Source: Hyphochytrium catenoides
Taxonomy: Eukaryota > Protista > Hyphochytriomycota
Assembly (NCBI GenBank): GCA_900088475.1
Contig: FLMG01003853.1
Coordinates: 23,059 to 87,058 of the forward strand
Length of the DNA stretch: 64,000 bases
Reading direction: 5' to 3'
The notes under the pieces were generated by a model. That model searched no databases and was not told the DNA's origin. It saw nothing but the letters and a program-made list of their open reading frames with translations. Position numbers and translations under genes: made by a program. Positions 1 to 15,500 of the stretch are shown here, piece after piece. Within the stretch, counting starts at the first letter, position 1. Each line of letters opens with the position of its first letter.

Positions 1-3000
1 TCCGGTGATGCTGACATTGGCACCACTGCCTGTTGCGAGAGAGCTACCTCCTACAATCTTTATAGCGCCAGCTGGACTAGATGTAGAAGTGGAGTTGCCG
101 CTAGCGATAAGGACACGACCAGAAGCACCGCTTGAGCTTCCTGACACAATTGATATGCCTCCGGAAGCCCCAACCCCTGGCACAATGCTTGAGGCAGAGG
201 ACAAGAGAATAGCACCACTATAAGCTCCCGAACCACTGGTCACCCTAACGGCTCCACCTCGTCCTAGAGGAGTTATGGAGTCTCCTGCGTTCAAATCCAG
301 ACCTGCCCCGCTTGCATCCTGCTCTACTGCGGATGAAGATCCTGCTGATAAAATAACGCGACCGGCGGTTCCAGCGGTGGACGACCCCGATCCAATGATG
401 ATATCCCCAGTACCTCCAGTCTTACTTGACCCAGAGCTCATCGTCATTCGTCCACTGCGAGAGCCTGATGCCAGCACTGAAGCGGAAGTCAGATATACGT
501 CCCCTGACTGCAAGTTGCCCATGCCGGAGGAAAACGAAAGTTGACCTCCTCTCGCAGTATTAGATTCCCCGGCATAGATTTCAACATTTGCACCGTCACC
601 ATTTCCAAAAGAAGAACCGCCTTTAATAGAAATGTTGCCAGATGATTGTCTGCTTGAACCTGAGGTCAGCTCAATGGCTCCCGAGACGCCAGTTGAGGAG
701 TCACCAGTGTGTAGAGAGATTGTACCTGAGCCAGAGCTTGCTATAGAAGGAGTACGGATAATGACGTTCCCGCTCCGTTGCTGCCCTGACGCACCAGACT
801 CAAATAACAATACTCCCCCTCTCCCACTTGAAGAAAACCCAGCTGATAAGTTGATCGCACCAGCGCTAAAAGCCCCGGCGGAACTGCCTCCCATAATGTT
901 TATAGCTCCTGCTCCTCCAAGATCGGAGCGTCCTGATCTTAACGTTAGTGGACCAGTTGATCCAGCCACGGATGAGCCCGTCTCCAATCGTAACTGACCG
1001 CTCACGCCTTTCTTGACATCCGAGGTAGCCAATATGGCAGCGCCGCTCGAGGCCTCAACCGCTGCTCCAGAAACCATTGTCAGGTTTCCACCATCAGCAG
1101 CAGTTGAGCCACCTGCCATAATGTTCACAGAACCACCGTGCGAATTTTCAGCCTTTCCTTGGCTTGACCCTGCTGTGAGTTTAATTGCCCCACCGACGCC
1201 CGAGTGACCCCTATAATCTCCTGCAGCGAGAAAGACGGCCCCTCCGTAGCTATTGTCAAAGGTGGTGCTGCCAGCTGTCAAACTGATGGTAGACCCATTG
1301 AAATTTCTCCTCATTAGTCCGGCGCTGTCAGCGTCAGTTCCGCTAGAGGCACCACCTGTTAGTACTATATCGCCCGATCTTCCCGCAGAGTTTTCACCGG
1401 AGCTTATTTGCACCATCCCGGTACTCGAACTTGGATTTCTAGCAGCTCCGCTGGACAAAACAACACGTCCACTGAAGCCGAGGTCCGACTTAGCCGTTGT
1501 AAGGCGCAGAGCTCCACTGCCGCTGTTTGGTCCCCCTGCTCCAGTCTTGATAGTAATGTCAGCCCCACTAAAGCCATTAGTAGTCGTGGATCCTCCGGCT
1601 AAAGTGATCTTCCCTGGCCTTTGGCCCGAATTGCCAGTCCCTATATTGAGGTCTCCAGATGGGCCCTTGTTTGCGCTGCCGGAAACGATGGTGATAGATC
1701 CAGTGCTGCCACTATGTGCTGAGCCGGTTGCAAGGGTGACAAAACCACTGTCTGCCGGGTTAGTAGAGGTAGGTGCTGTTGCAAGGGTGATAACACCAGT
1801 GCCACTGCGTTCACTTCTGCCACTGGAAATTTTGACACTACCACCTGGAGAGCTGAGCGCTTTCCCGCCGTGGATGATGATTGAGCCACCCTCCTCTACT
1901 GGAAATCGCGAAGCGGAATCGCCGCCCAGAAGGCTGACATCTCCACCTTTTGCGGTGGAGCCCATTCCTCCTTGTATCTGGACCATTCCACCGGGCCCCT
2001 TTGCTGAATCACCTGCCTGCATATTTATGGCCCCTCCCAGACCATTAGTTGCCACTCCGGCTAGAATGCTAACTGACCCTGACTTCGGTCCGTTAGAGGT
2101 TCCAGACGCAAGAACTAGGGGCCCACTTTCGTCCTTGAATGCAGGTCCCGTTCGTATGTGTATATATCCACTCCTACCAGTCCGTCCAGCTTCTGCAGTT
2201 TCGATTTGAATATCACCACTGGATGTTGCTTCACCCCTACCAGAGTGGAGGAATACGGAGCCACCAAAGCTTGCCTTAGAAAAACCGCCTTGGATGGTTA
2301 CGTTGCCACCAATGTTAAGCGCCTTGTTTGCACCAAGTCCATCTCCCCCTGACAGATGAAGTGACCCTCCTGAGCCACCGGCGGTTTCTGTGTTGGTGCC
2401 ACTTCCGGGCTTTATTGCTACAGAACCTCCTCGCCCGTTTTGTGATCTCGAGTCTCCTGCCATGATACGGATAGCACCTCCGAGACTAGTAGTCCCTTGG
2501 CCCACTGCCAAGGATATGTCCCCTCCATGTCCGCCAAGAGCAGGTCCAGTCTGAAAGTCCAAAGCACCACTGTTCCCAGCAGTTGTTGAACCTGTTTTGA
2601 GTAAAATAATACCACTTTCTCCCCGCCTTCCTGCGTCCTGGGTATGAAGAAGCAGGTCGCCACTGGAGGTCGCAGAAGAAAAGCCCGTGCGGATGGCTAC
2701 CCTTCCACCAAACGCATCATCAGATGTAGTTCCTGCCTCAAGAGAAATAGCTCCACCTACACCTGCATTTCCGTCCCCTACCTTAAGGTCAATGTTGCCT
2801 CCTCTGCCTCTGCTGGCTCGTCCTGTCCTGATAGTTACGGGGCCGCTATGTCCGCTTGTGGAGTTACCCGAAAAAAGCTCAATACCCCCGCTCACACCTG
2901 ATCGCCCTGCATTAGCGGTTCCCAACACTAAATCTCCGCTAGAGGAGTCAGCACCAAAGCCCGTCAAGAGCTCAATGTAACCACCCGTGCTCCGACGCGA

Positions 3001-6000
3001 CCAGCCACCGTTTATCACGACGTTACCACCTACGTCAATCCTTTCGTTGCCGCCCTGAGCTGCACCGGCAATCATGGAGATGGACCCGCCATTACCGCCA
3101 TCGGCGTAGTAGGTACTGGTACCCTCTCCGGCTGCGATGACGACATCACCCCCTTTCTGCTGCTTCTCACTCGTGTGTCCAGCTTGAAGAGCGATATCGC
3201 CGCCATCACCCTTCCTACCGGTACCAACGTGGATAGATATTCCACCACCAGCTCCTTCATAAGCTGCACCCGACAACATAGAGATGGTGCCGGAGTCTCC
3301 TTTTGTGGCGGTTCCTGTGATGATAGATACAGCGCCACTGACCCCTCCTTCTCCTGATGATGCTGTAGCGAAAGTTATGTCACCGCTGGAAGTCTGGGTA
3401 CTATGTCCTGATAGCAATTTTATGGAACCTCCTTTGGCTACATCTGTTGTGGATCCTGCCGTTATTGAGACCGAGCCACCATCACCAAGGCTGCCACCTC
3501 CCACCAAGACAGATATTCCTCCACCTGCTCCACCACTAGACTCACCGGTCTCGATTCTGAGGTTGCCGGAGTCACCAAGCGCTGCGCTGCCCGATGCTAG
3601 TGTGACGCTGCCACTAGCTCCATGCTGGCCTGAGTCGGCCGATGAAAATTTAATAGATCCACTGGAAGCCAGGGCAGAGGATCCTGAACTGATTCTGACT
3701 GAGCCACTGGACCCCAACCTGGCTCGTCCTCCTTCTATGTGCACTTCCCCACCGCTGTCAAAGCGGCTTTCTCCTTCGGCGACACCACCTGTAATTTTGA
3801 CGTTGCCGCCATTTCCGCCATCTACAGAATTCTGGCTCAAACCATCACCTCCACTAATGCTTACCAAACCCCCCATTTTCCCGGCTGACAGAGTATTGCC
3901 AGCCTTTATAGCCAGTACACCACCATTTCCATAGTCACCAGTCCCCACCTCAACCTGTATTTTGCCACCCGAGCCATCCCCTGATGTCCCTGTAGTCATC
4001 CGTATGCCACCACTCGTACCATGCTGGGACTTGCCGGTCGCAACATCAATTCGACCACTAGCGCCGTTCATGCCCGGTTCTCCTGTGGTGACGGCTATTG
4101 ATCCGCTGAGACCCTCAGCGCTGTCACCAGACGCCAAAAGCACACTGCCACCGACGCCTGTTGCAGCAGAGCCAGCCTTCAAGGTCAGCTTGCCACCAAG
4201 ATCACGAAAAGAGTTGCCAGCACTAGAGCCTGCAACAACGAGGACATCACCACCATCTCCGCCATTCTCATTATCTGTATTAACCCCTTGGCCTGCTGAT
4301 AAGTAAATAGCTCCCCCTTTCGAGGCTGCACCTTGAGCAGCACCAGGTACGAGCAAGATACCTCCAGCATCACCATTGACGCTCTCCCCAGTCGCAAGTA
4401 CAACTTGTCCACTCGGACCCGCAATAGCATCTCCGGTTTTCAGCCGCACCTCTCCTGTGTGTGTTGTGGAAGAGGAGCCAGTGGCCATAAAAATGTCACC
4501 GCTTTGCCCAAAGCTCCCCGCGTCATCTGTTACCACTCTCACGGCTCCTGAGGATTCATCTGTTGAACGCCCAGAGCTGAGTACAATATCTCCACCTCTT
4601 GAGGTCCGGGAAAATCCGGCACTCAGTAAGACAGAGCCGGCGTAAGGGTTACCCTCTCCAGCCCGGAGGTAGATGTTTCCTCCGCTTCCGTTATCTGAAG
4701 TAGGAACGGTGGATCCTGCTTGGAGAATTATTGCGCCACCCCAACCCGTGCCTAGGCTATCTGAAGATCCTCCCGTGATGGAGACCTCTCCCCCTCCATT
4801 TTGTTGGGACTTTCCAGCCACCAGAGCAACATCTCCTCCCGTCTGACTGGCATCGCCTACCAAGAGTTTAATCGATCCTGACGCTGCACTTTCGGTTCTA
4901 CCTGTACCGACGGTAACAGCACCAGAACTCCCATTTGACGAATCACCAGTCTTCAGGTCCAAAGTGCCAGACCCTCCGGCTGTTAATATTCCTGACGTGG
5001 CAGTACCTAAAAAGATGGCCCCAGAGGTGGCTCCTCGACTTGATCCAGACCTTAATGTGATTTTCCCTCCAACCTCAGTCCCTGCATGACCGCCCTCTAA
5101 TAGCAACAGACCGACTTCACCAGACTTGAAAGAGCTACCGGTGGACAGAATAATGCTACCGGAGACTCCCTTCTCAGTAATCCCTGTGGCAAAACGGAGG
5201 TCCCCACTCTGGGCAGCCTCTGTGCTGCCTGTTCCCAAGATAATCGCCCCAGTCATTCCACCAGAAGCCTCGTAGGTTGTGAGCCTTATATCCCCGCTGG
5301 ATGTGGGGCCTGCGCCGCTTCGTAGAGTCATGTGTCCTCCCCTTCCTAGATTGGAAGACCCCCCGATCAGAACAAGCTCGCCTCCAGTTCCGTTTGGATC
5401 GTTGGCGTTACCACTAGCGAGGGTAAGAATACCACCTGCTAACAACCCCGATCCAGCAATAATGGAAATTTCGCCACCGGAGCCTTCACGCTGACGTGAG
5501 GAGCCCGACAGAAATTGGAGACCTCCGGCTTTGTGACTGGCTTCACCTGCCGAGATCAGTACGCTTCCACTATCACCCTTGAGCGCCGGACCCGTGGAAA
5601 GGAGGAGGTCTCCCGAACTTCCCGCTTGTGCCTTGCCACTGGCAAGATAAATAGGCCCACTATCCGCCCCCTCAGGGCCAGTGCCACCCCCGGCAGAGGT
5701 TATTGAAACTGGTCCAGAGGAGCGTCCATTGTCAGCACCCTTCCCAGAGGATATTGAAAGGATACCTCCATCGCTTACAGCTGAGTTACCAGCCGAAAGG
5801 AGCAGTTTGCCCGCCACATCGGCATGGCTGGTTCCCACCGTCAGCTCAATGTCCCCGGCAGAGCCACCCTCAAGCGCAGAACCCGTTCTAAGGGTTATTG
5901 CGCCACTTCCACCAAAATGGGATAGGCCTGTTTGGAGCTCGATGCTACCACTTTGACCATCTATTCCTGGTGATGCAGTTCTCAGCCCTAATTTGCCACT

Positions 6001-7239
6001 TGATTGTGTGCCACTACCGCCACTTTCAAGTTCAAGGCTTCCCCCGACCCCCTGTGAAGAGGAGCCGCCCATCAGGGTGACAGTTCCTCCCACTCCGTCA
6101 ACAGCCTTTCCTGCCTTGAGAGTAATGCTGCCTCCGTCTCCCAAGTTCGACGTGGCAGCGATGCTGCCTGCAGCAGTGCCAGAACCGTCCCCTGCAGCGA
6201 TGATCACCGATCCACCGCTACCACCCTGGGGATTGGGGTTACTGCCAGCCAGCAAGGAAATCTGTCTGCCAGGGCGATGAGGTGCTACGTCGTCCGAGGC
6301 GCGAAGGAGCACATCTTTTGCTGATCTTACTGCAAATCCGTCCCTGTCGCTCTTCATTTCAAAGCTTACGGATCCTGCCATCCCTTTACGTAGAAAAGAA
6401 GGACAAGTTAGATACTGTCAGCCGAGGGGCAGATGAGGGCCAAACCTTCTTGAACAAGTTCACCTCCCTCACCAAAAGCAGGATCGGGTGTGATACGAAT
6501 CTTCCCTGTGATGTCCCGTACTGAAGAGAAAGTTGAAAGAAAAAGCAATGTTAGACCTATCCTATCCTTCTAACTCTCCCGAAACTACTGGTAAGGGGTG
6601 CATCAATTTGAAATACCTTCTAGGAAGGAGGTAGGACAGGGGCCGTCAAACACAAGGCCATCGCAGTCGGAAGAGTAAGCAGCGCTGATAGTGAGGCAAG
6701 ACTTGGAAGTGGCACACCAAGCGCAGTCCTCAGCCGTAGCGCACGTATCGCATGAAGAGTACTGGCTACAGTCGGGAATGACTAATGACAGATGCCCTTG
6801 AAGTTAGATATCTGCTCCGGCAACCGCTTGCCACTCAGCATCGGGAGGATACTTACCTGGACACTGGTTTGCCCCATAAAACCACTCTGCACAAGGACTT
6901 CCTGTATTTTCTGGTCCTTCCACGGTTCCTTGCATGCAGGTTAGAGTTGAGTGACAAAATCCGCAGCCGGGTGTCGCAAGACAAGGTATGCATGCCTTTA
7001 CGTCTTGCCTGAAAATAATTAGGAATACGGCAAAAAGTGAAGTCAATCCATGACCAAACCACAATGGGTATTTTTTTTTGATCTGACCAGTAGTCCCCGT
7101 TAGACGTAGCACTGTTTAAGAGCTCGCATGTGACAGATTTATTGGAGCCAGAGCTGGACTGTGATGCTGCAGGGAAAGTTAGAACGAATGCCTGCAAAGA
7201 GAGGAGCGCTGAAGCGCTCAGGCTTAACGAGGGCCACAT
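1..7239 (-). CDS. Giant secreted protein: signal peptide, two PSI-like Cys-rich domains, then >2,100 aa of Gly/Ser-rich ~14-15-residue repeats (GGxIxLxAG); 3' end lies outside the window
   Basis: Exons 7239-7088, 7008-6857, 6781-6617, 6520-6464 and 6383-<1 are joined by phase-compatible GT-AG introns. They give MWPSLSLSASALLSLQAFVLTFPAAS (signal), CIPCLATPGCGFCHSTLTC and CSQYSSCDTCATAEDCAWCATSKSC (PSI-like), then GGSVIIAAGDGSG/GGSITLKAGKAVDG repeats. The same frame reads KIVGGSSLATGSGANVSITG at positions 60-1. The ORF track lists nothing in this frame, consistent with no stop before the edge. Confidence 0.88.
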
Positions 7240-9576: not shown

Positions 9577-11276
<1,700 letters not shown>

Positions 11277-12547: not shown

Positions 12548-15500
12548 TTACTTGTCCCATCGAGCGATGACAGATGACTCTCTGTCATCGTCATATTTTA
12601 TCACCTGCCATTCAGGGCCCAATCAGTGCTTCTTTCGTATCGGTACATTTTGAGCAAACAAGGAAACGCCGCTGAAGAAGTTGGCTCTGCCGTCTTAGCG
12701 ATGAAATAAGGAATGGAAGAACACCTACAACCCCAAGCTCCTTTACCTGTGACTCCAGCAAATGTCCGTGGGTGCCCTCCTGCTCGTCTTCCTCTTTTTC
12801 AAACTGCTTCGTGATAGATAGAATGGTGTTCACTATGCCTTTTTTTGCTTTCGGCCGCTTGGGCACACGCTTCTGAGCATTTCTTTCAGGTCGTGATAGA
12901 CGTCGTTTCGTTCTTCCCATAGACTAACGTAACATAGCAGCCGCGATGTCAGTGGAGTTACCAGCGTAGGAGTCTGACAACGAGGCTATAACAGTTGGAG
13001 AAGAACATACAAAGCCGCACAAACAGAACAACAACACCATGCCCCAAATGGCTTGAACGACTTCCACGGGAATACATGGCCACTTCTTACCAAAGAGAGA
13101 CTGTCTGCACTATCCTCATCCTCAGAATCAAACAGGAGGCAGTCCATCTAGGAAGCAGGCATTTTCGTTAGTGAACCATGAAGAGAATAATCTTATGCAT
13201 AAGGAGTCAGGCGCGAACCCATCCGAACACTTTCGTCACCTTCTTGACCTCACTTCTTTCCTTGTTGGGATGAGCTCCTGTGGGTCCCTCCTTATTTGGA
13301 TCTGATGGTGTGAGGACTGAATGCTTGAAGAGCTCAGGATCAAATCGGAACGGGTCAGATGTTGTCCCGGATTTAAGCTTCACCGTCGTGATTTCATTCT
13401 CTTTCTCTGTCAATGGGTCCTTTGCATCCACTTCCCGGGATTGATTAGACTGACAGTGCGACCCGCTCTTCTTGAGAGGCTCCGCTTTACTGAGTAGTGG
13501 AGTGAGGCTACTTTCCTCTTTTCTTAAGTCAGCACATTTCAAAGCTTCCGGCTCTTCATTATGATGCGTTTTCGCATTCTGAAAGTGCTGTGGTGAAGTG
13601 GCAGCCACGACCTTCTGGGCTTCAGTTTGGTTTTCCGTATCTGTGTGGGCTAATTTTTTGAGTGTGTCATTCATCTTGCCTTTTAGCCCAAAGTCCTGCT
13701 GCTCCAGACCGGTCCCATTAGGGTTGCTCTGCTGCGTTCGCGCGTCATTGTTGTTGATCTTAATGGCCTGAGCCAGGCTTCCTGTCTCCTGCCCGTTAGT
13801 GCTCAGATCCTCGCTATTCTGAAAGTCTGGAGAGTACTTTCCCTCTTGCTGTATAGATCCACTTGTTTGCTCCGCGGGCAAAGCGTTGCACGGAGGGGAA
13901 GGTAGGAGGTCTGATAGAGCGAATTGCTGGTCGTATTCCGGCTTGTACGTCGAGGTCTTCATTATTTCTACCAGCCATTCTGCAGTCACCACTGGGACGT
14001 TCCACCGTTGTGCCATTTCGTACTTCCTGCTCCATCCAGGGCACCGCGAGAGCAGGTGTGTATTCCTTCCTAGAGCAAATGTCTCGTCCACGACGATGCC
14101 CAGACATGAAGCAATGGTGGAGATGGCGCATTTGTCCTCCTTTTTGTGGAAGCGGGTAAGACAGATACGTAGAGAGAGTCCATCAACAGTCCTCAAAGGA
14201 CCAGGAAGGGAACGGAAGAGTTGGTGGGCTTTGGCTCTCAGGGTGCTCCTCGCCTACGTAAGAAGGTCAGACAGCAAGCATCAAAGGTAGGAGGGAAGAA
14301 CTTGAGATGATGCGCTCGACTGAGGGTTGAAGATGAGCACCAAACTAAACATCGTCTGTCATGCCAAAGCAATCTAGAAGTGCAATGCCTTGCCATTGGG
14401 TTACAGACGCACCAGCAGACAAGCCTTCAACCATACTTCACTGACAACATCCGCTCGCGGAAACTTCTTTGCAAATTGGTCTTGTATTGTTCTGGTAAAA
14501 GTTGAGGTGGAGAGAACCAATACATGGGTTACTTGAGGAAACGTTTGTCCTTCTTCCTCTTGATCCGTCTTCTTGAGCCAGCAGCGCCCGCCGTTCGCCA
14601 GGATTGCCGACCGAATATGAGTCATCTGCTCAATCAAAAGGAGTGAGGGGTGGTGAGCTCGTAGGATTTAGCGATTCGTCGCCTGACAAATGCCAACGAA
14701 CACCATACGGAAGGTAGGGCCAACCATTTACTTTTTTCGATGTCCTGGTTAACTTGGAGAGCCTGATCATAATCGTTCTTACATGCCGTTGGTGCCCTTG
14801 CAAATGGGTCACAAAAATAAGAAGACCTTCAAAGACCCCTGATCCTCGGCTTCCCTTGCAGTCCTTTGGATCCTGCTCGGTATCGTCCAATTCGGCCTTC
14901 CTTACACGCAGGGGTAAGGCCCCTGATGCATCAGTGCCTCTTTCCACTTTCGGCAGGTGTGTTACAAGGCTTGTATTCATCACTGAACGACGGCAGATAT
15001 AACATCAGAAGTGAGGAGCAGTCGTTTAGGAGCCTGAAAACAGCCAGCATGATAATATAAAAAGTAGCTTATGGCTTAGAAGCGATTGCGTCATATTCAC
15101 AGCAGGATGATCAGGTCGATCTGACAAGCTTTGATATAAAAACTGTGGTTAAAGAGGTCCTTGACGACCTTACCCCTGTTGAACCTAGGCGGATAATCTG
15201 CTGCATCCTGGACCGCCTGTTTGAGGCAACACTGTACCAGCCATTTTGCTGAGACCACGCTGACCTCGGAGCTGCAAGAACTTAACAGCCTCTTCGCACT
15301 GAGCAAAGTGAGCAATGCTTGTCAGAGTGCTTGTCAGGGAGCCACTTTAAAAAGCTTCGTCAACTGTAAAACCCATTACTGATAATATGATCACTGGAAG
15401 TGTCCAATCTATGGAATAGGATAACTTGGAAAGGATAGTGGCAAATGCATCGAGTCTAAGAACGGATAGCAAGATCTTCACATTTCAGAGACCTGGCACT

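What the first reader, a model, noticed from the sequence alone, without database searches (positions are those of the whole stretch)
1..7239. Hidden giant secreted PSI + Gly-rich beta-solenoid/fibre-like protein
Seen: a single exon of at least 6.38 kb (about 2,127 codons, open to the window edge) encodes an estimated 140 or more degenerate ~14-15-aa units of form G-G-x-(I/V)-x-(L/I)-x-(A/S/T)-G-x-S-xxx. There are hints of a higher-order cycle (SSGAVx(I/V)xT..AG..GxSGxIxLxTG). It follows a signal peptide and two PSI-like domains built from four small exons. It is missing from the ORF track; only its Pro-rich antisense shadows appear. Established: alternating-hydrophobe strands with Gly turns are typical of beta-solenoids and trimeric beta-helices such as phage tail spikes and autotransporter passengers, while PSI domains are eukaryotic extracellular modules. 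Inference: this is a long rigid extracellular rod (adhesin, hair or filament component, or extrusome element) with an architecture I do not know to have been characterised.
Basis: partly seen in the sequence, partly recalled or inferred. Interest (0 to 1): 0.78.

Follow-up and report, generated by a model that had tools for sequence, protein, structure and literature searches.

The report
Giant secreted phage-like fibre protein
The window holds the first 2,300 or so residues of a real protist gene of at least 9,800 residues for a secreted protein built almost wholly from a 15-residue glycine/serine repeat, which most likely forms a very long three-chain fibre folded with a bacteriophage-type helper domain, and whose family nobody has studied.

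Summary
The minus-strand frame is open from window 6417 to base 1, with 0 stops in 2,127 codons against 30-126 in the other frames. It encodes about 139 degenerate 15-residue units, (G/S)-G-x-(I/V/L)-x-(L/I)-x-(A/S/T)-G-x-S-x-x-G-x. Four small GT-AG exons lie upstream: a signal-like peptide, two PSI modules and a linker. The frame runs on to the contig start, giving at least 9,800 residues with the 3' end missing. The only non-repeat stretch is a Peptidase_S74/ICA chaperone domain about 1 kb left of the window, with its catalytic Lys replaced by Leu. The genome is probably Hyphochytrium catenoides. Aphanomyces proteins share the collinear PSI-PSI-linker-repeat head. The repeat has no Pfam, PHROG or PDB match, yet 7,236 cluster representatives match it. 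The best reading is the N-terminal arm of a homotrimeric, phage-tail-fibre-like extracellular filament. A single-chain solenoid is less likely. Trimer state, expression and cellular role are untested. The scan noted this family before on other contigs of this genome, and noted this gene's ICA separately.

The parts
7088..7239 (-). Exon 1: start codon at 7239 and a signal-peptide-like N-terminus. The first Cys of the first PSI-like module probably lies here.
   Evidence: Sequence read, with a GT donor at 7087-7086. The mean Kyte-Doolittle hydropathy is 1.5-1.7 over residues 5-26, followed by AAS/QS. No signal-peptide predictor was available.
6857..7008 (-). Exon 2: first PSI-like Cys-rich module (7 Cys).
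   Evidence: PF01437 scores 16.9 bits, E 0.0085, below the cut-off of 23.1. It is 48-52% identical to the collinear segments of P0049 and P0084.
6617..6781 (-). Exon 3: second PSI domain (8 Cys).
   Evidence: PF01437 scores 26.8 bits, E 6.6e-6, above the cut-off. It is 46-47% identical to P0084 and P0049 directly after their exon-2 matches.
6446..6520 (-). Exon 4: short linker with a conserved ...G-x-(I/L)-x-(I/V)-x-x-D-P-x-F-G-x-G-G-E-L motif.
   Evidence: Sequence. The motif aligns between the exon-3 and exon-5 matches in P0084, P0049 and P0046.
1..6383 (-). Window part of exon 5: 2,127 codons, about 139 units of the 15-residue Gly/Ser repeat. This is the N-terminal arm of the fibre, and the exon continues left of the window.
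   Evidence: AlphaFold2 model of 2878-3867. The frame continues to the contig start.
6384..6445 (-). Intron 4 (62 nt, GT-AG). Introns 1-3 are 7009-7087, 6782-6856 and 6521-6616.
   Evidence: Read. Phases are consistent (2, 1, 1, 1).

Best explanation
Window 1-7239 (minus strand) is the 5' end of a real cellular gene of a stramenopile, probably Hyphochytrium catenoides.

Architecture of the product:
- a signal peptide
- two PSI modules
- a short conserved linker
- about 2,430 residues of a 15-residue Gly/Ser beta-strand repeat
- a phage-type intramolecular chaperone (ICA, Peptidase_S74) domain
- at least 7,200 further repeat residues (3' end not assembled)

Proposed mechanism: three chains associate through the ICA domain. 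The ICA templates an intertwined triple beta-helix in the repeat arm N-terminal to it, which is the arm encoded in this window. The result is a secreted homotrimeric filament some tenths of a micrometre long, with the PSI head at its free end. Because the catalytic Lys is Leu here, the ICA probably stays in the chain as a permanent trimer node instead of cutting itself out.

Shown: the gene structure, the repeat, PSI, ICA homology, the Lys-to-Leu change, relatives in oomycetes and the cellular gene neighbourhood.

Inferred: secretion, trimer, triple-beta-helix fold, no cleavage, and the filament role.
For: Gene reality: there are 0 stops in 2,127 codons within the window. No stop was seen along some 9,800 codons to the contig start, read as two open stretches across a 67-N gap. 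The other frames carry hundreds of stops. Repeats are only 30-40% identical, with no DNA tandem repeat.

Head: PSI hits. The order e2-e3-e4-e5 is collinear in P0084 (Aphanomyces astaci RLO13579.1), P0049 and P0053.

ICA:
- PF13884 scores 23.1 bits in the genome search, over the cut-off of 22, and 20 bits in the excised piece.
- The MYRF ICA chain 7dc3 matches at E 0.001.
- The ICA region of the Aphanomyces euteiches protein P0033 matches at E 1.9e-26.
- PHROG 1980 'tail fiber protein' matches at E 4.5e-11 over the pre-ICA neck plus the ICA.
- The motif is SDERML here, against SDxRIK in the relatives.

Published biology: the ICA chaperones a triple beta-helix N-terminal to itself. MYRF K583A blocks cleavage but still oligomerises (PMC3742443).

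Fold: the AlphaFold2 monomer has pLDDT 79.3 and pTM 0.65, with no helix or strand assigned. Only 4 of 48,161 PDB chains reach Z of 2 or more. Three are phage fibre or spike proteins (hyaluronidases 6wv2 and 2c3f, tailspike 24qj) and one is a Streptomyces hyaluronidase (4ufq). Three uncultured Caudovirales proteins match at E 1e-5 to 6e-4.

Context: the neighbours are enolase and a BRCT protein.
Against: - No multimer prediction could be run, so the trimer is not tested.
- The structural matches are weak (Z 3.5 or less, TM about 0.3). 'DSSP gave nothing' could be a technical blank.
- The ICA match to Pfam is borderline, and its AlphaFold2 model failed (pLDDT 40.6).
- The ICA sits mid-chain, so what folds the 7,200 or more residues after it is unexplained.
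- There are no expression data, and the signal peptide was not scored by a predictor.
- Matches to a Gly/Ser-rich profile may be partly compositional.
Confidence: 0.68

Rival explanations
1. Single-chain beta-solenoid. Each 15-residue unit is one coil of a monomeric narrow beta-helix, like the 15-residue-per-coil insect antifreeze helices or an autotransporter passenger. This would give a rod about 0.3 micrometre long without intertwining.
For: The unit has three Gly turns (positions -3/-2, 5 and 10) and inward-facing I/L plus small residues, which could close a triangular 15-residue coil. Gly also shows a half-period of 7-8.
Against: The AlphaFold2 monomer did not close into a solenoid. No strands were assigned, and no beta-solenoid appeared among 48,161 chains at Z of 2 or more. 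The chain carries an ICA domain, whose characterised role is trimerisation of the region before it. There is no Pfam hit to pectate-lyase, PbH1 or autotransporter families.
Confidence: 0.14
2. A largely disordered or gel-forming Gly/Ser-rich secreted protein (mucilage or adhesive) rather than an ordered fibre.
For: The composition is 39-43% Gly plus Ser. No known fold matches. Secreted giant repeat adhesives are known in oomycete zoospores (my own knowledge).
Against: There is a strict 15-residue register with alternating I/V-x-L/I. Gly columns are invariant across segments that are only 27-42% identical. The model has pLDDT 79 and pTM 0.65. Pro is low at 1.2-1.6%.
Confidence: 0.08
3. An endogenous viral fibre gene from an integrated polinton-like virus, virophage or giant virus, not a host gene.
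For: Fibre proteins of up to 3.9k aa with a terminal Peptidase_S74 are common in polinton-like viruses (PMC12220804). H. catenoides carries giant-virus insertions (PMC5795050).
Against: The gene has four spliceosomal introns and a PSI head. Its neighbours are enolase and a BRCT gene. At more than 29 kb the gene alone is about as long as a whole polinton-like virus genome (14-40 kb). The head is collinear in Aphanomyces genomes. Several paralogues lie on other contigs.
Confidence: 0.05
4. Assembly artefact or dead repeat DNA.
For: The assembly is short-read only. There is a 67-N gap inside the gene, and the frame changes across it. The gene runs off the contig.
Against: No stop was seen along some 9,800 codons of diverged, non-tandem sequence. 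Homologues exist in other species.
Confidence: 0.02

Closest known systems
Phage tailspike and tail-fibre proteins with a C-terminal ICA domain (K1F endosialidase type; Pfam PF13884; PHROG 1980)
   Same: Both have an ICA domain preceded by a fibre shaft. The pre-ICA neck plus ICA match PHROG 1980 at E 4.5e-11. The repeat model matches uncultured Caudovirales proteins. One repeat-family relative has a Phage_T7_tail N-terminus.
   Different: This is a cellular eukaryotic gene with introns, a signal peptide and a PSI head. It is about ten times longer. The ICA is mid-chain, not terminal, and the catalytic Lys is lost. The repeat matched no PHROG family and no cultured phage by tblastn.
MYRF (myelin regulatory factor), which Li et al. 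2013 described as a repurposing of the phage ICA domain in eukaryotes
   Same: Both carry a mid-chain ICA domain. Chain 7dc3 matches at E 0.001. The MYRF K583A mutant, the analogue of the natural Leu here, trimerises without cutting.
   Different: MYRF is a membrane-bound transcription factor with an Ndt80 DNA-binding domain. This protein is a secreted repeat fibre with no DNA-binding or transmembrane part seen.
Polinton-like-virus fibre proteins with Peptidase_S74 (PMC12220804)
   Same: Both are large modular fibre proteins in protist genomes that carry the same chaperone domain.
   Different: Those are viral, reach at most about 3.9k aa, have a terminal ICA, and use laminin-G, collagen or adenovirus-fibre modules. 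This gene has a cellular context, introns, PSI and a different repeat.
Streptococcal phage hyaluronidases HylP1/HylP2 (2c3f, 6wv2), triple-stranded beta-helix
   Same: They are the best structural neighbours of the repeat model (Z 3.5 and 3.3 over 190 residues).
   Different: The scores are weak and sequence identity is 6-9%. There is no sign of a lyase site.
Adenovirus fibre shaft (triple beta-spiral; 15-residue pseudo-repeat, from my own knowledge)
   Same: Both have a 15-residue period and belong to a trimeric fibre.
   Different: No sequence or fold match was found, and the motif differs. Not tested beyond the fold searches.
Stramenopile mastigoneme (flagellar hair) proteins such as Ocm1, SIG and Mas (from my own knowledge)
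   Same: They are secreted Cys-module-bearing hair proteins in the same lineage. Hyphochytrium keeps the hairy anterior flagellum.
   Different: Those are EGF-rich and of ordinary size. No EGF domain was found here, and no link was tested.

Membership tests
ICA / Peptidase_S74-bearing trimeric fibre proteins | Sequence match to the ICA domain (PF13884) at or above the curated cut-off | tested here: met
   The match scores 23.1 bits against a cut-off of 22 in the genome search, but 20 bits in an excised piece, so it is borderline. It is backed by E 1.9e-26 to the Aphanomyces ICA region, MYRF 7dc3 at E 0.001 and PHROG 1980 at E 4.5e-11. The domain lies about 1 kb left of the window, in the same open frame.
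ICA / Peptidase_S74-bearing trimeric fibre proteins | Catalytic Ser-Lys dyad (S-D-x-R-x-K) | tested here: not met
   Ser and Asp are present, but Lys is replaced by Leu (SDERML). Relatives and paralogue C584 have SDxRIK.
ICA / Peptidase_S74-bearing trimeric fibre proteins | Homotrimer with a triple beta-helix N-terminal to the ICA | not testable with these tools
   Only monomer prediction was available. The monomer model and its weak neighbours are compatible with this feature.
ICA / Peptidase_S74-bearing trimeric fibre proteins | ICA at the C-terminus and released after folding | tested here: not met
   The ICA lies at about residue 2,470 of at least 9,800, and the repeats resume after it.
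PSI (plexin-semaphorin-integrin) domain, PF01437 | Profile match above the cut-off with the 8-Cys pattern | tested here: met
   Exon 3 scores 26.8 bits against 23.1 and has 8 Cys. Exon 2 scores 16.9 bits (below the cut-off) and has 7 Cys, with one more Cys in exon 1.
Single-chain right- or left-handed beta-solenoids (pectate-lyase/PbH1, autotransporter passenger) | Profile or fold match to a known solenoid family | tested here: not met
   There is no Pfam or NCBIfam hit. No solenoid appears among the PDB fold matches.
Viral (polinton-like virus or giant-virus) fibre gene | Location within a viral element | tested here: not met
   The gene has introns. Enolase and a BRCT gene lie next to it. 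The left side is unknown because the contig ends there.
Mastigoneme proteins (EGF-rich) | EGF-like repeats | tested here: not met
   No EGF hit was found in the head exons or the repeat body.

The most novel reading that the evidence does not exclude
This gene family builds a visible surface appendage of pseudofungal stramenopiles. Candidates are fine filaments on the flagellar hairs, or the hairs or coat fibres of zoospores and cysts. On this reading, phage-derived ICA domains placed inside the chain act as internal trimer nodes, some cutting and some not. These nodes would let a cell fold and section micrometre-scale triple beta-helices, a eukaryotic organelle part built on a phage tail-fibre folding system.
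Probability: 0.18. Interest if true: 0.85.

Novelty: new variant of a known kind. Interest (0 to 1): 0.62.

Why it matters
Phage-type ICA domains have been characterised in phage and viral fibres, and in cellular eukaryotes I know of characterisation only in the transcription factor MYRF. Here the same domain sits inside a secreted protein of about 10,000 residues or more. The protein has a eukaryotic PSI head, belongs to a multi-gene family in the same genome, and has relatives in Aphanomyces (A. astaci is the crayfish-plague agent).

The 15-residue repeat has no Pfam, PHROG or PDB relative, yet it matches thousands of proteins from genomes and metagenomes. It would therefore be a widespread uncatalogued fibre module.

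If the trimeric reading is right, these are among the longest beta-helical fibres encoded by any cell. They would give a testable entry into which surface structures of zoospores or hyphae they build. They would also show how one chaperone domain folds arms thousands of residues long.

Tried and rejected
- Pfam and NCBIfam on the 2,139-aa window product: nothing.
- PDB sequence search with a 1,000-aa piece and with a 26-row profile: nothing credible.
- PHROGs on the repeat: nothing.
- tblastn against 50,697 phage records: nothing.
- Foldseek against the PDB: only E 3.7.
- AlphaFold2 of the ICA piece with an 8-row alignment: failed, pLDDT 40.6, so unusable and not searched.
- The search for related loci:
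  - P0008 in viral contigs found nothing.
  - P0048 in bacterial genomes found nothing.
- Cluster look-ups gave almost no names.
- Looking for the gene's 3' end by overlap with the contig start: only a 52-nt, 94% match to the start of C3625, which is not a join.
- Literature searches for S74, endosialidase or ICA with oomycetes or stramenopiles: no paper on this family.
- The exons were searched one by one by reference.
- Chlamydial Pmp (GGAI) and filamentous-haemagglutinin repeats were considered and dropped: no Pmp hit, and Fil_haemagg only at E 1.
Full report
**1. Observation**

On the minus strand one frame is open from window 6417 to base 1, a run of 2,139 codons. That frame has no stop. 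The other five frames over the same DNA have 30 to 126 stops.

The ORF list lacks the gene only because ORFs that run off the source are not listed. The plus-strand ORFs it does list over this stretch are 20-26% proline, the expected antisense shadow of Gly codons.

The product is 21% Gly and 18% Ser. Hydrophobic residues and Gly both autocorrelate most strongly at lag 15 (0.29 and 0.28). The commonest spacing of strand motifs is exactly 15. Anchored on the strand, the unit reads (G/S)-G-x-(I/V/L)-x-(L/I)-x-(A/S/T/G)-G-x-(S/A/G)-x-x-(G)-x, with Gly at 93-100% at two positions. By length the window holds about 139 units.

A higher-order cycle is real but loose:
- Gly autocorrelation has peaks at 148 and 240.
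- The best internal matches lie 240-255 residues apart at 40-42% identity.

There is no tandem repeat at the DNA level. Typical segment pairs are 27-42% identical. The array is therefore old and kept open by selection, not a recent amplification.

**2. The head**

Reading the DNA gives five exons with GT-AG introns of 79, 75, 96 and 62 nt and consistent phases:

| Exon | Window coordinates | Content |
|---|---|---|
| e1 | 7239-7088 | Start codon, signal-like peptide |
| e2 | 7008-6857 | First PSI-like module |
| e3 | 6781-6617 | Second PSI domain |
| e4 | 6520-6446 | Linker |
| e5 | 6383 onwards | Repeat body |

- Exon 1 has a moderately hydrophobic signal-like stretch followed by AAS/QS. No predictor was available.
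- Exon 3 is a PSI domain above Pfam's cut-off (26.8 against 23.1 bits, 8 Cys).
- Exon 2 is PSI-like but below the cut-off (16.9 bits).

I did not build or search the joined protein. The exons were searched one at a time by reference.

Comparative evidence supports the splicing. In P0084 (RLO13579.1, a partial hypothetical protein of Aphanomyces astaci) the matches to e2, e3, e4 and the start of e5 follow one another at residues 71-115, 118-169, about 190-211 and 220-308. P0049 and P0053 show the same order, and these proteins also score as PSI.

**3. The gene is far larger than the window**

The window is contig C2721:23059-87058. After fetching the left part, the same frame runs on without a stop to a 67-N scaffold gap. 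It then continues in another frame to base 3 of the contig; the frame change is to be expected when the gap length is arbitrary. That gives 6,624 plus 3,178 residues, at least 9,800 codons on one exon of at least 29.4 kb, with the 3' end missing.

A scan for windows poor in Gly and Ser flags only the first residues of the exon, one isolated window near residue 4,470 that I did not examine, and a single block at residues 2,430-2,590 of the exon product. That block lies about 1 kb left of the window.

**4. That block is an ICA (Peptidase_S74) domain**

- Pfam PF13884 scores 23.1 bits in the genome search, over the cut-off of 22, and 20 bits on an excised piece.
- The solved MYRF ICA chain 7dc3 matches at E 0.001.
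- The ICA region of an Aphanomyces euteiches protein (P0033, itself PF13884-positive) matches at E 1.9e-26 over about 160 residues.
- The pre-ICA neck plus the ICA match PHROG 1980, 'tail fiber protein', at E 4.5e-11.

Most ICA copies in the relatives, and paralogue C584, read S-D-x-R-I-K. This gene reads S-D-E-R-M-L, so the catalytic Lys is Leu.

In MYRF the Ser-Lys dyad does the cutting, and K583A blocks cutting while oligomerisation persists. The ICA is described as chaperoning a triple beta-helix in the sequence N-terminal to it (PMC3742443). The sequence N-terminal to the ICA here is exactly the arm encoded in this window. My AlphaFold2 run on the ICA piece failed (pLDDT 40.6), so the ICA call rests on sequence alone.

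**5. Fold of the repeat**

I predicted window:2878-3867:- (330 aa) with an alignment of 26 diverged internal segments.
- The best model has mean pLDDT 79.3 and pTM 0.65, and DSSP assigned no helix or strand.
- Foldseek against the PDB found nothing better than E 3.7, a streptococcal phage hyaluronidase.
- An exhaustive alignment to 48,161 chains found only four with Z of 2 or more: phage hyaluronidases 6wv2 and 2c3f (Z 3.5 and 3.3), a Streptomyces hyaluronidase (3.3) and a phage tailspike (2.1).
- Against predicted viral structures, three uncultured Caudovirales proteins match at E 1e-5 to 6e-4 with 24-29% identity.

These scores are weak. Still, a closed monomeric solenoid should have given strands and many solenoid matches, and it gave none. 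The model looks like one protomer of an intertwined fibre. A multimer prediction, the decisive test, was not available.

**6. Relatives**

The repeat has no Pfam, NCBIfam, PHROG or PDB sequence relative.

A profile of the 26 segments, scored against 1.84 billion cluster representatives, finds:

| E-value threshold | Proteins |
|---|---|
| 1e-3 or better | 7,236 |
| 1e-10 or better | 2,137 |
| 1e-30 or better | 234 |

. Some of this may be compositional.

Of the top 40, four carry Peptidase_S74. One each carries Kringle, teneurin-type EGF, PSI and a phage T7 tail-fibre N-terminus. Most carry nothing. Several N-termini look like phage or bacterial tail-fibre starts, and others are signal peptides followed by Cys-rich modules.

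Named relatives are Aphanomyces astaci, A. euteiches and A. invadans hypothetical proteins. The ESM Atlas neighbours are oomycete clusters, one auto-named 'Peptidase S74 domain-containing protein (Fragment)'. P0001 and P0004 each have three ICA domains between repeat arms.

In this genome, repeat paralogues lie on at least eight other contigs: C584, C1684, C4288, C3200, C2066, C4278, C3625 and C1553, with open frames of up to 6,589 codons. C1850 separately holds a 4,861-codon open frame with a PF13884 match, but its ICA is of a different type and I did not show that it carries the repeat.

**7. Organism and context**

The genome has 4,759 contigs. The published Hyphochytrium catenoides assembly has 4,758 scaffolds plus a mitochondrial genome (PMC5795050).

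The next genes are enolase (9577-10913, minus strand) and a BRCT protein (13207-14196). With the introns, the PSI head and the oomycete orthologues, this argues against an integrated viral fibre gene, although such genes with S74 domains are common in polinton-like viruses (PMC12220804).

**8. Reading**

This is most likely the N-terminal arm and head of a secreted homotrimeric filament of phage-tail-fibre type.

From remembered geometries the length per residue per chain would be about:
- 0.3 Å for a 15-residue coil
- 0.6 Å for a gp5-type triple helix
- 0.9 Å for an adenovirus-type spiral

On those figures the visible 9,800 residues would span roughly 0.3 to 0.9 micrometre. This is inference, not measurement.

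What folds the 7,200 or more residues after the ICA is unexplained, as is which cell structure the protein builds. Hair, cyst-coat and matrix roles are guesses.

**9. Prior notes and novelty**

The scan has noted this family before on other contigs of this genome, and this gene's ICA separately. I checked the Lys-to-Leu claim and the paralogues myself. The notes' claims about heterokont algae and potato-blight relatives I did not verify.

Noticed in passing
contig C2721:9537-9603 (left of the window; L002:6479-6545): A 67-N scaffold gap lies inside the giant exon, and the open frame changes phase across it. This is most simply an arbitrary gap length, but a real frameshift or a short intron cannot be excluded.
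   Followed up: partly
contig C2721:21877-22065 (about 1 kb left of the window; L004, L010): The only ICA domain seen in this gene has Leu where relatives have the catalytic Lys (SDERML against SDxRIK). In relative P0001, the third of its three ICA domains has Ala in place of the catalytic Ser (AADSRIK).
   Followed up: yes
G000 contigs C584, C1553, C1684, C3625, C4288, C3200, C2066, C4278 (and C1850): A multi-gene family, or fragments of a few giant genes, with the same repeat. Open frames reach 6,589 codons (C1553). C584 has an ICA with an intact Ser-Lys dyad just after a stop or intron. C1850 holds a 4,861-codon open frame with a different-type PF13884 match, and its repeat content was not shown.
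   Followed up: partly
C3625:1-52 against C2721:83-134: A 52-nt, 94% match between the starts of two contigs, both of which break inside repeat genes. This is probably where the short-read assembly collapsed.
   Followed up: no
P0192 (Aphanomyces invadans H310_14209): This gene model joins a PSI-fibre head (69% identical to A. astaci P0084) to the PTHB1/BBS9 hairpin and C-terminal helix domains. It is likely an annotation chimera of two neighbouring genes.
   Followed up: no
P0007/P0008 (clusters of 10 and 252 member sequences on contigs of about 34-50 kb): An abundant environmental relative of 2,394 aa with 58 Cys. It has an ICA near residue 490 and a second ICA motif cut off at its C-terminus. 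It was not found in the IMG/VR viral contigs, and its source organism is unknown.
   Followed up: partly
P0002/P0003: In these relatives the same repeat alternates with three Kringle domains. The module therefore combines with different eukaryotic Cys-rich domains.
   Followed up: no
window 9577-10913 (-): The enolase gene is split into N- and C-domain ORFs, presumably by an intron. It is the immediate neighbour of the fibre gene.
   Followed up: no
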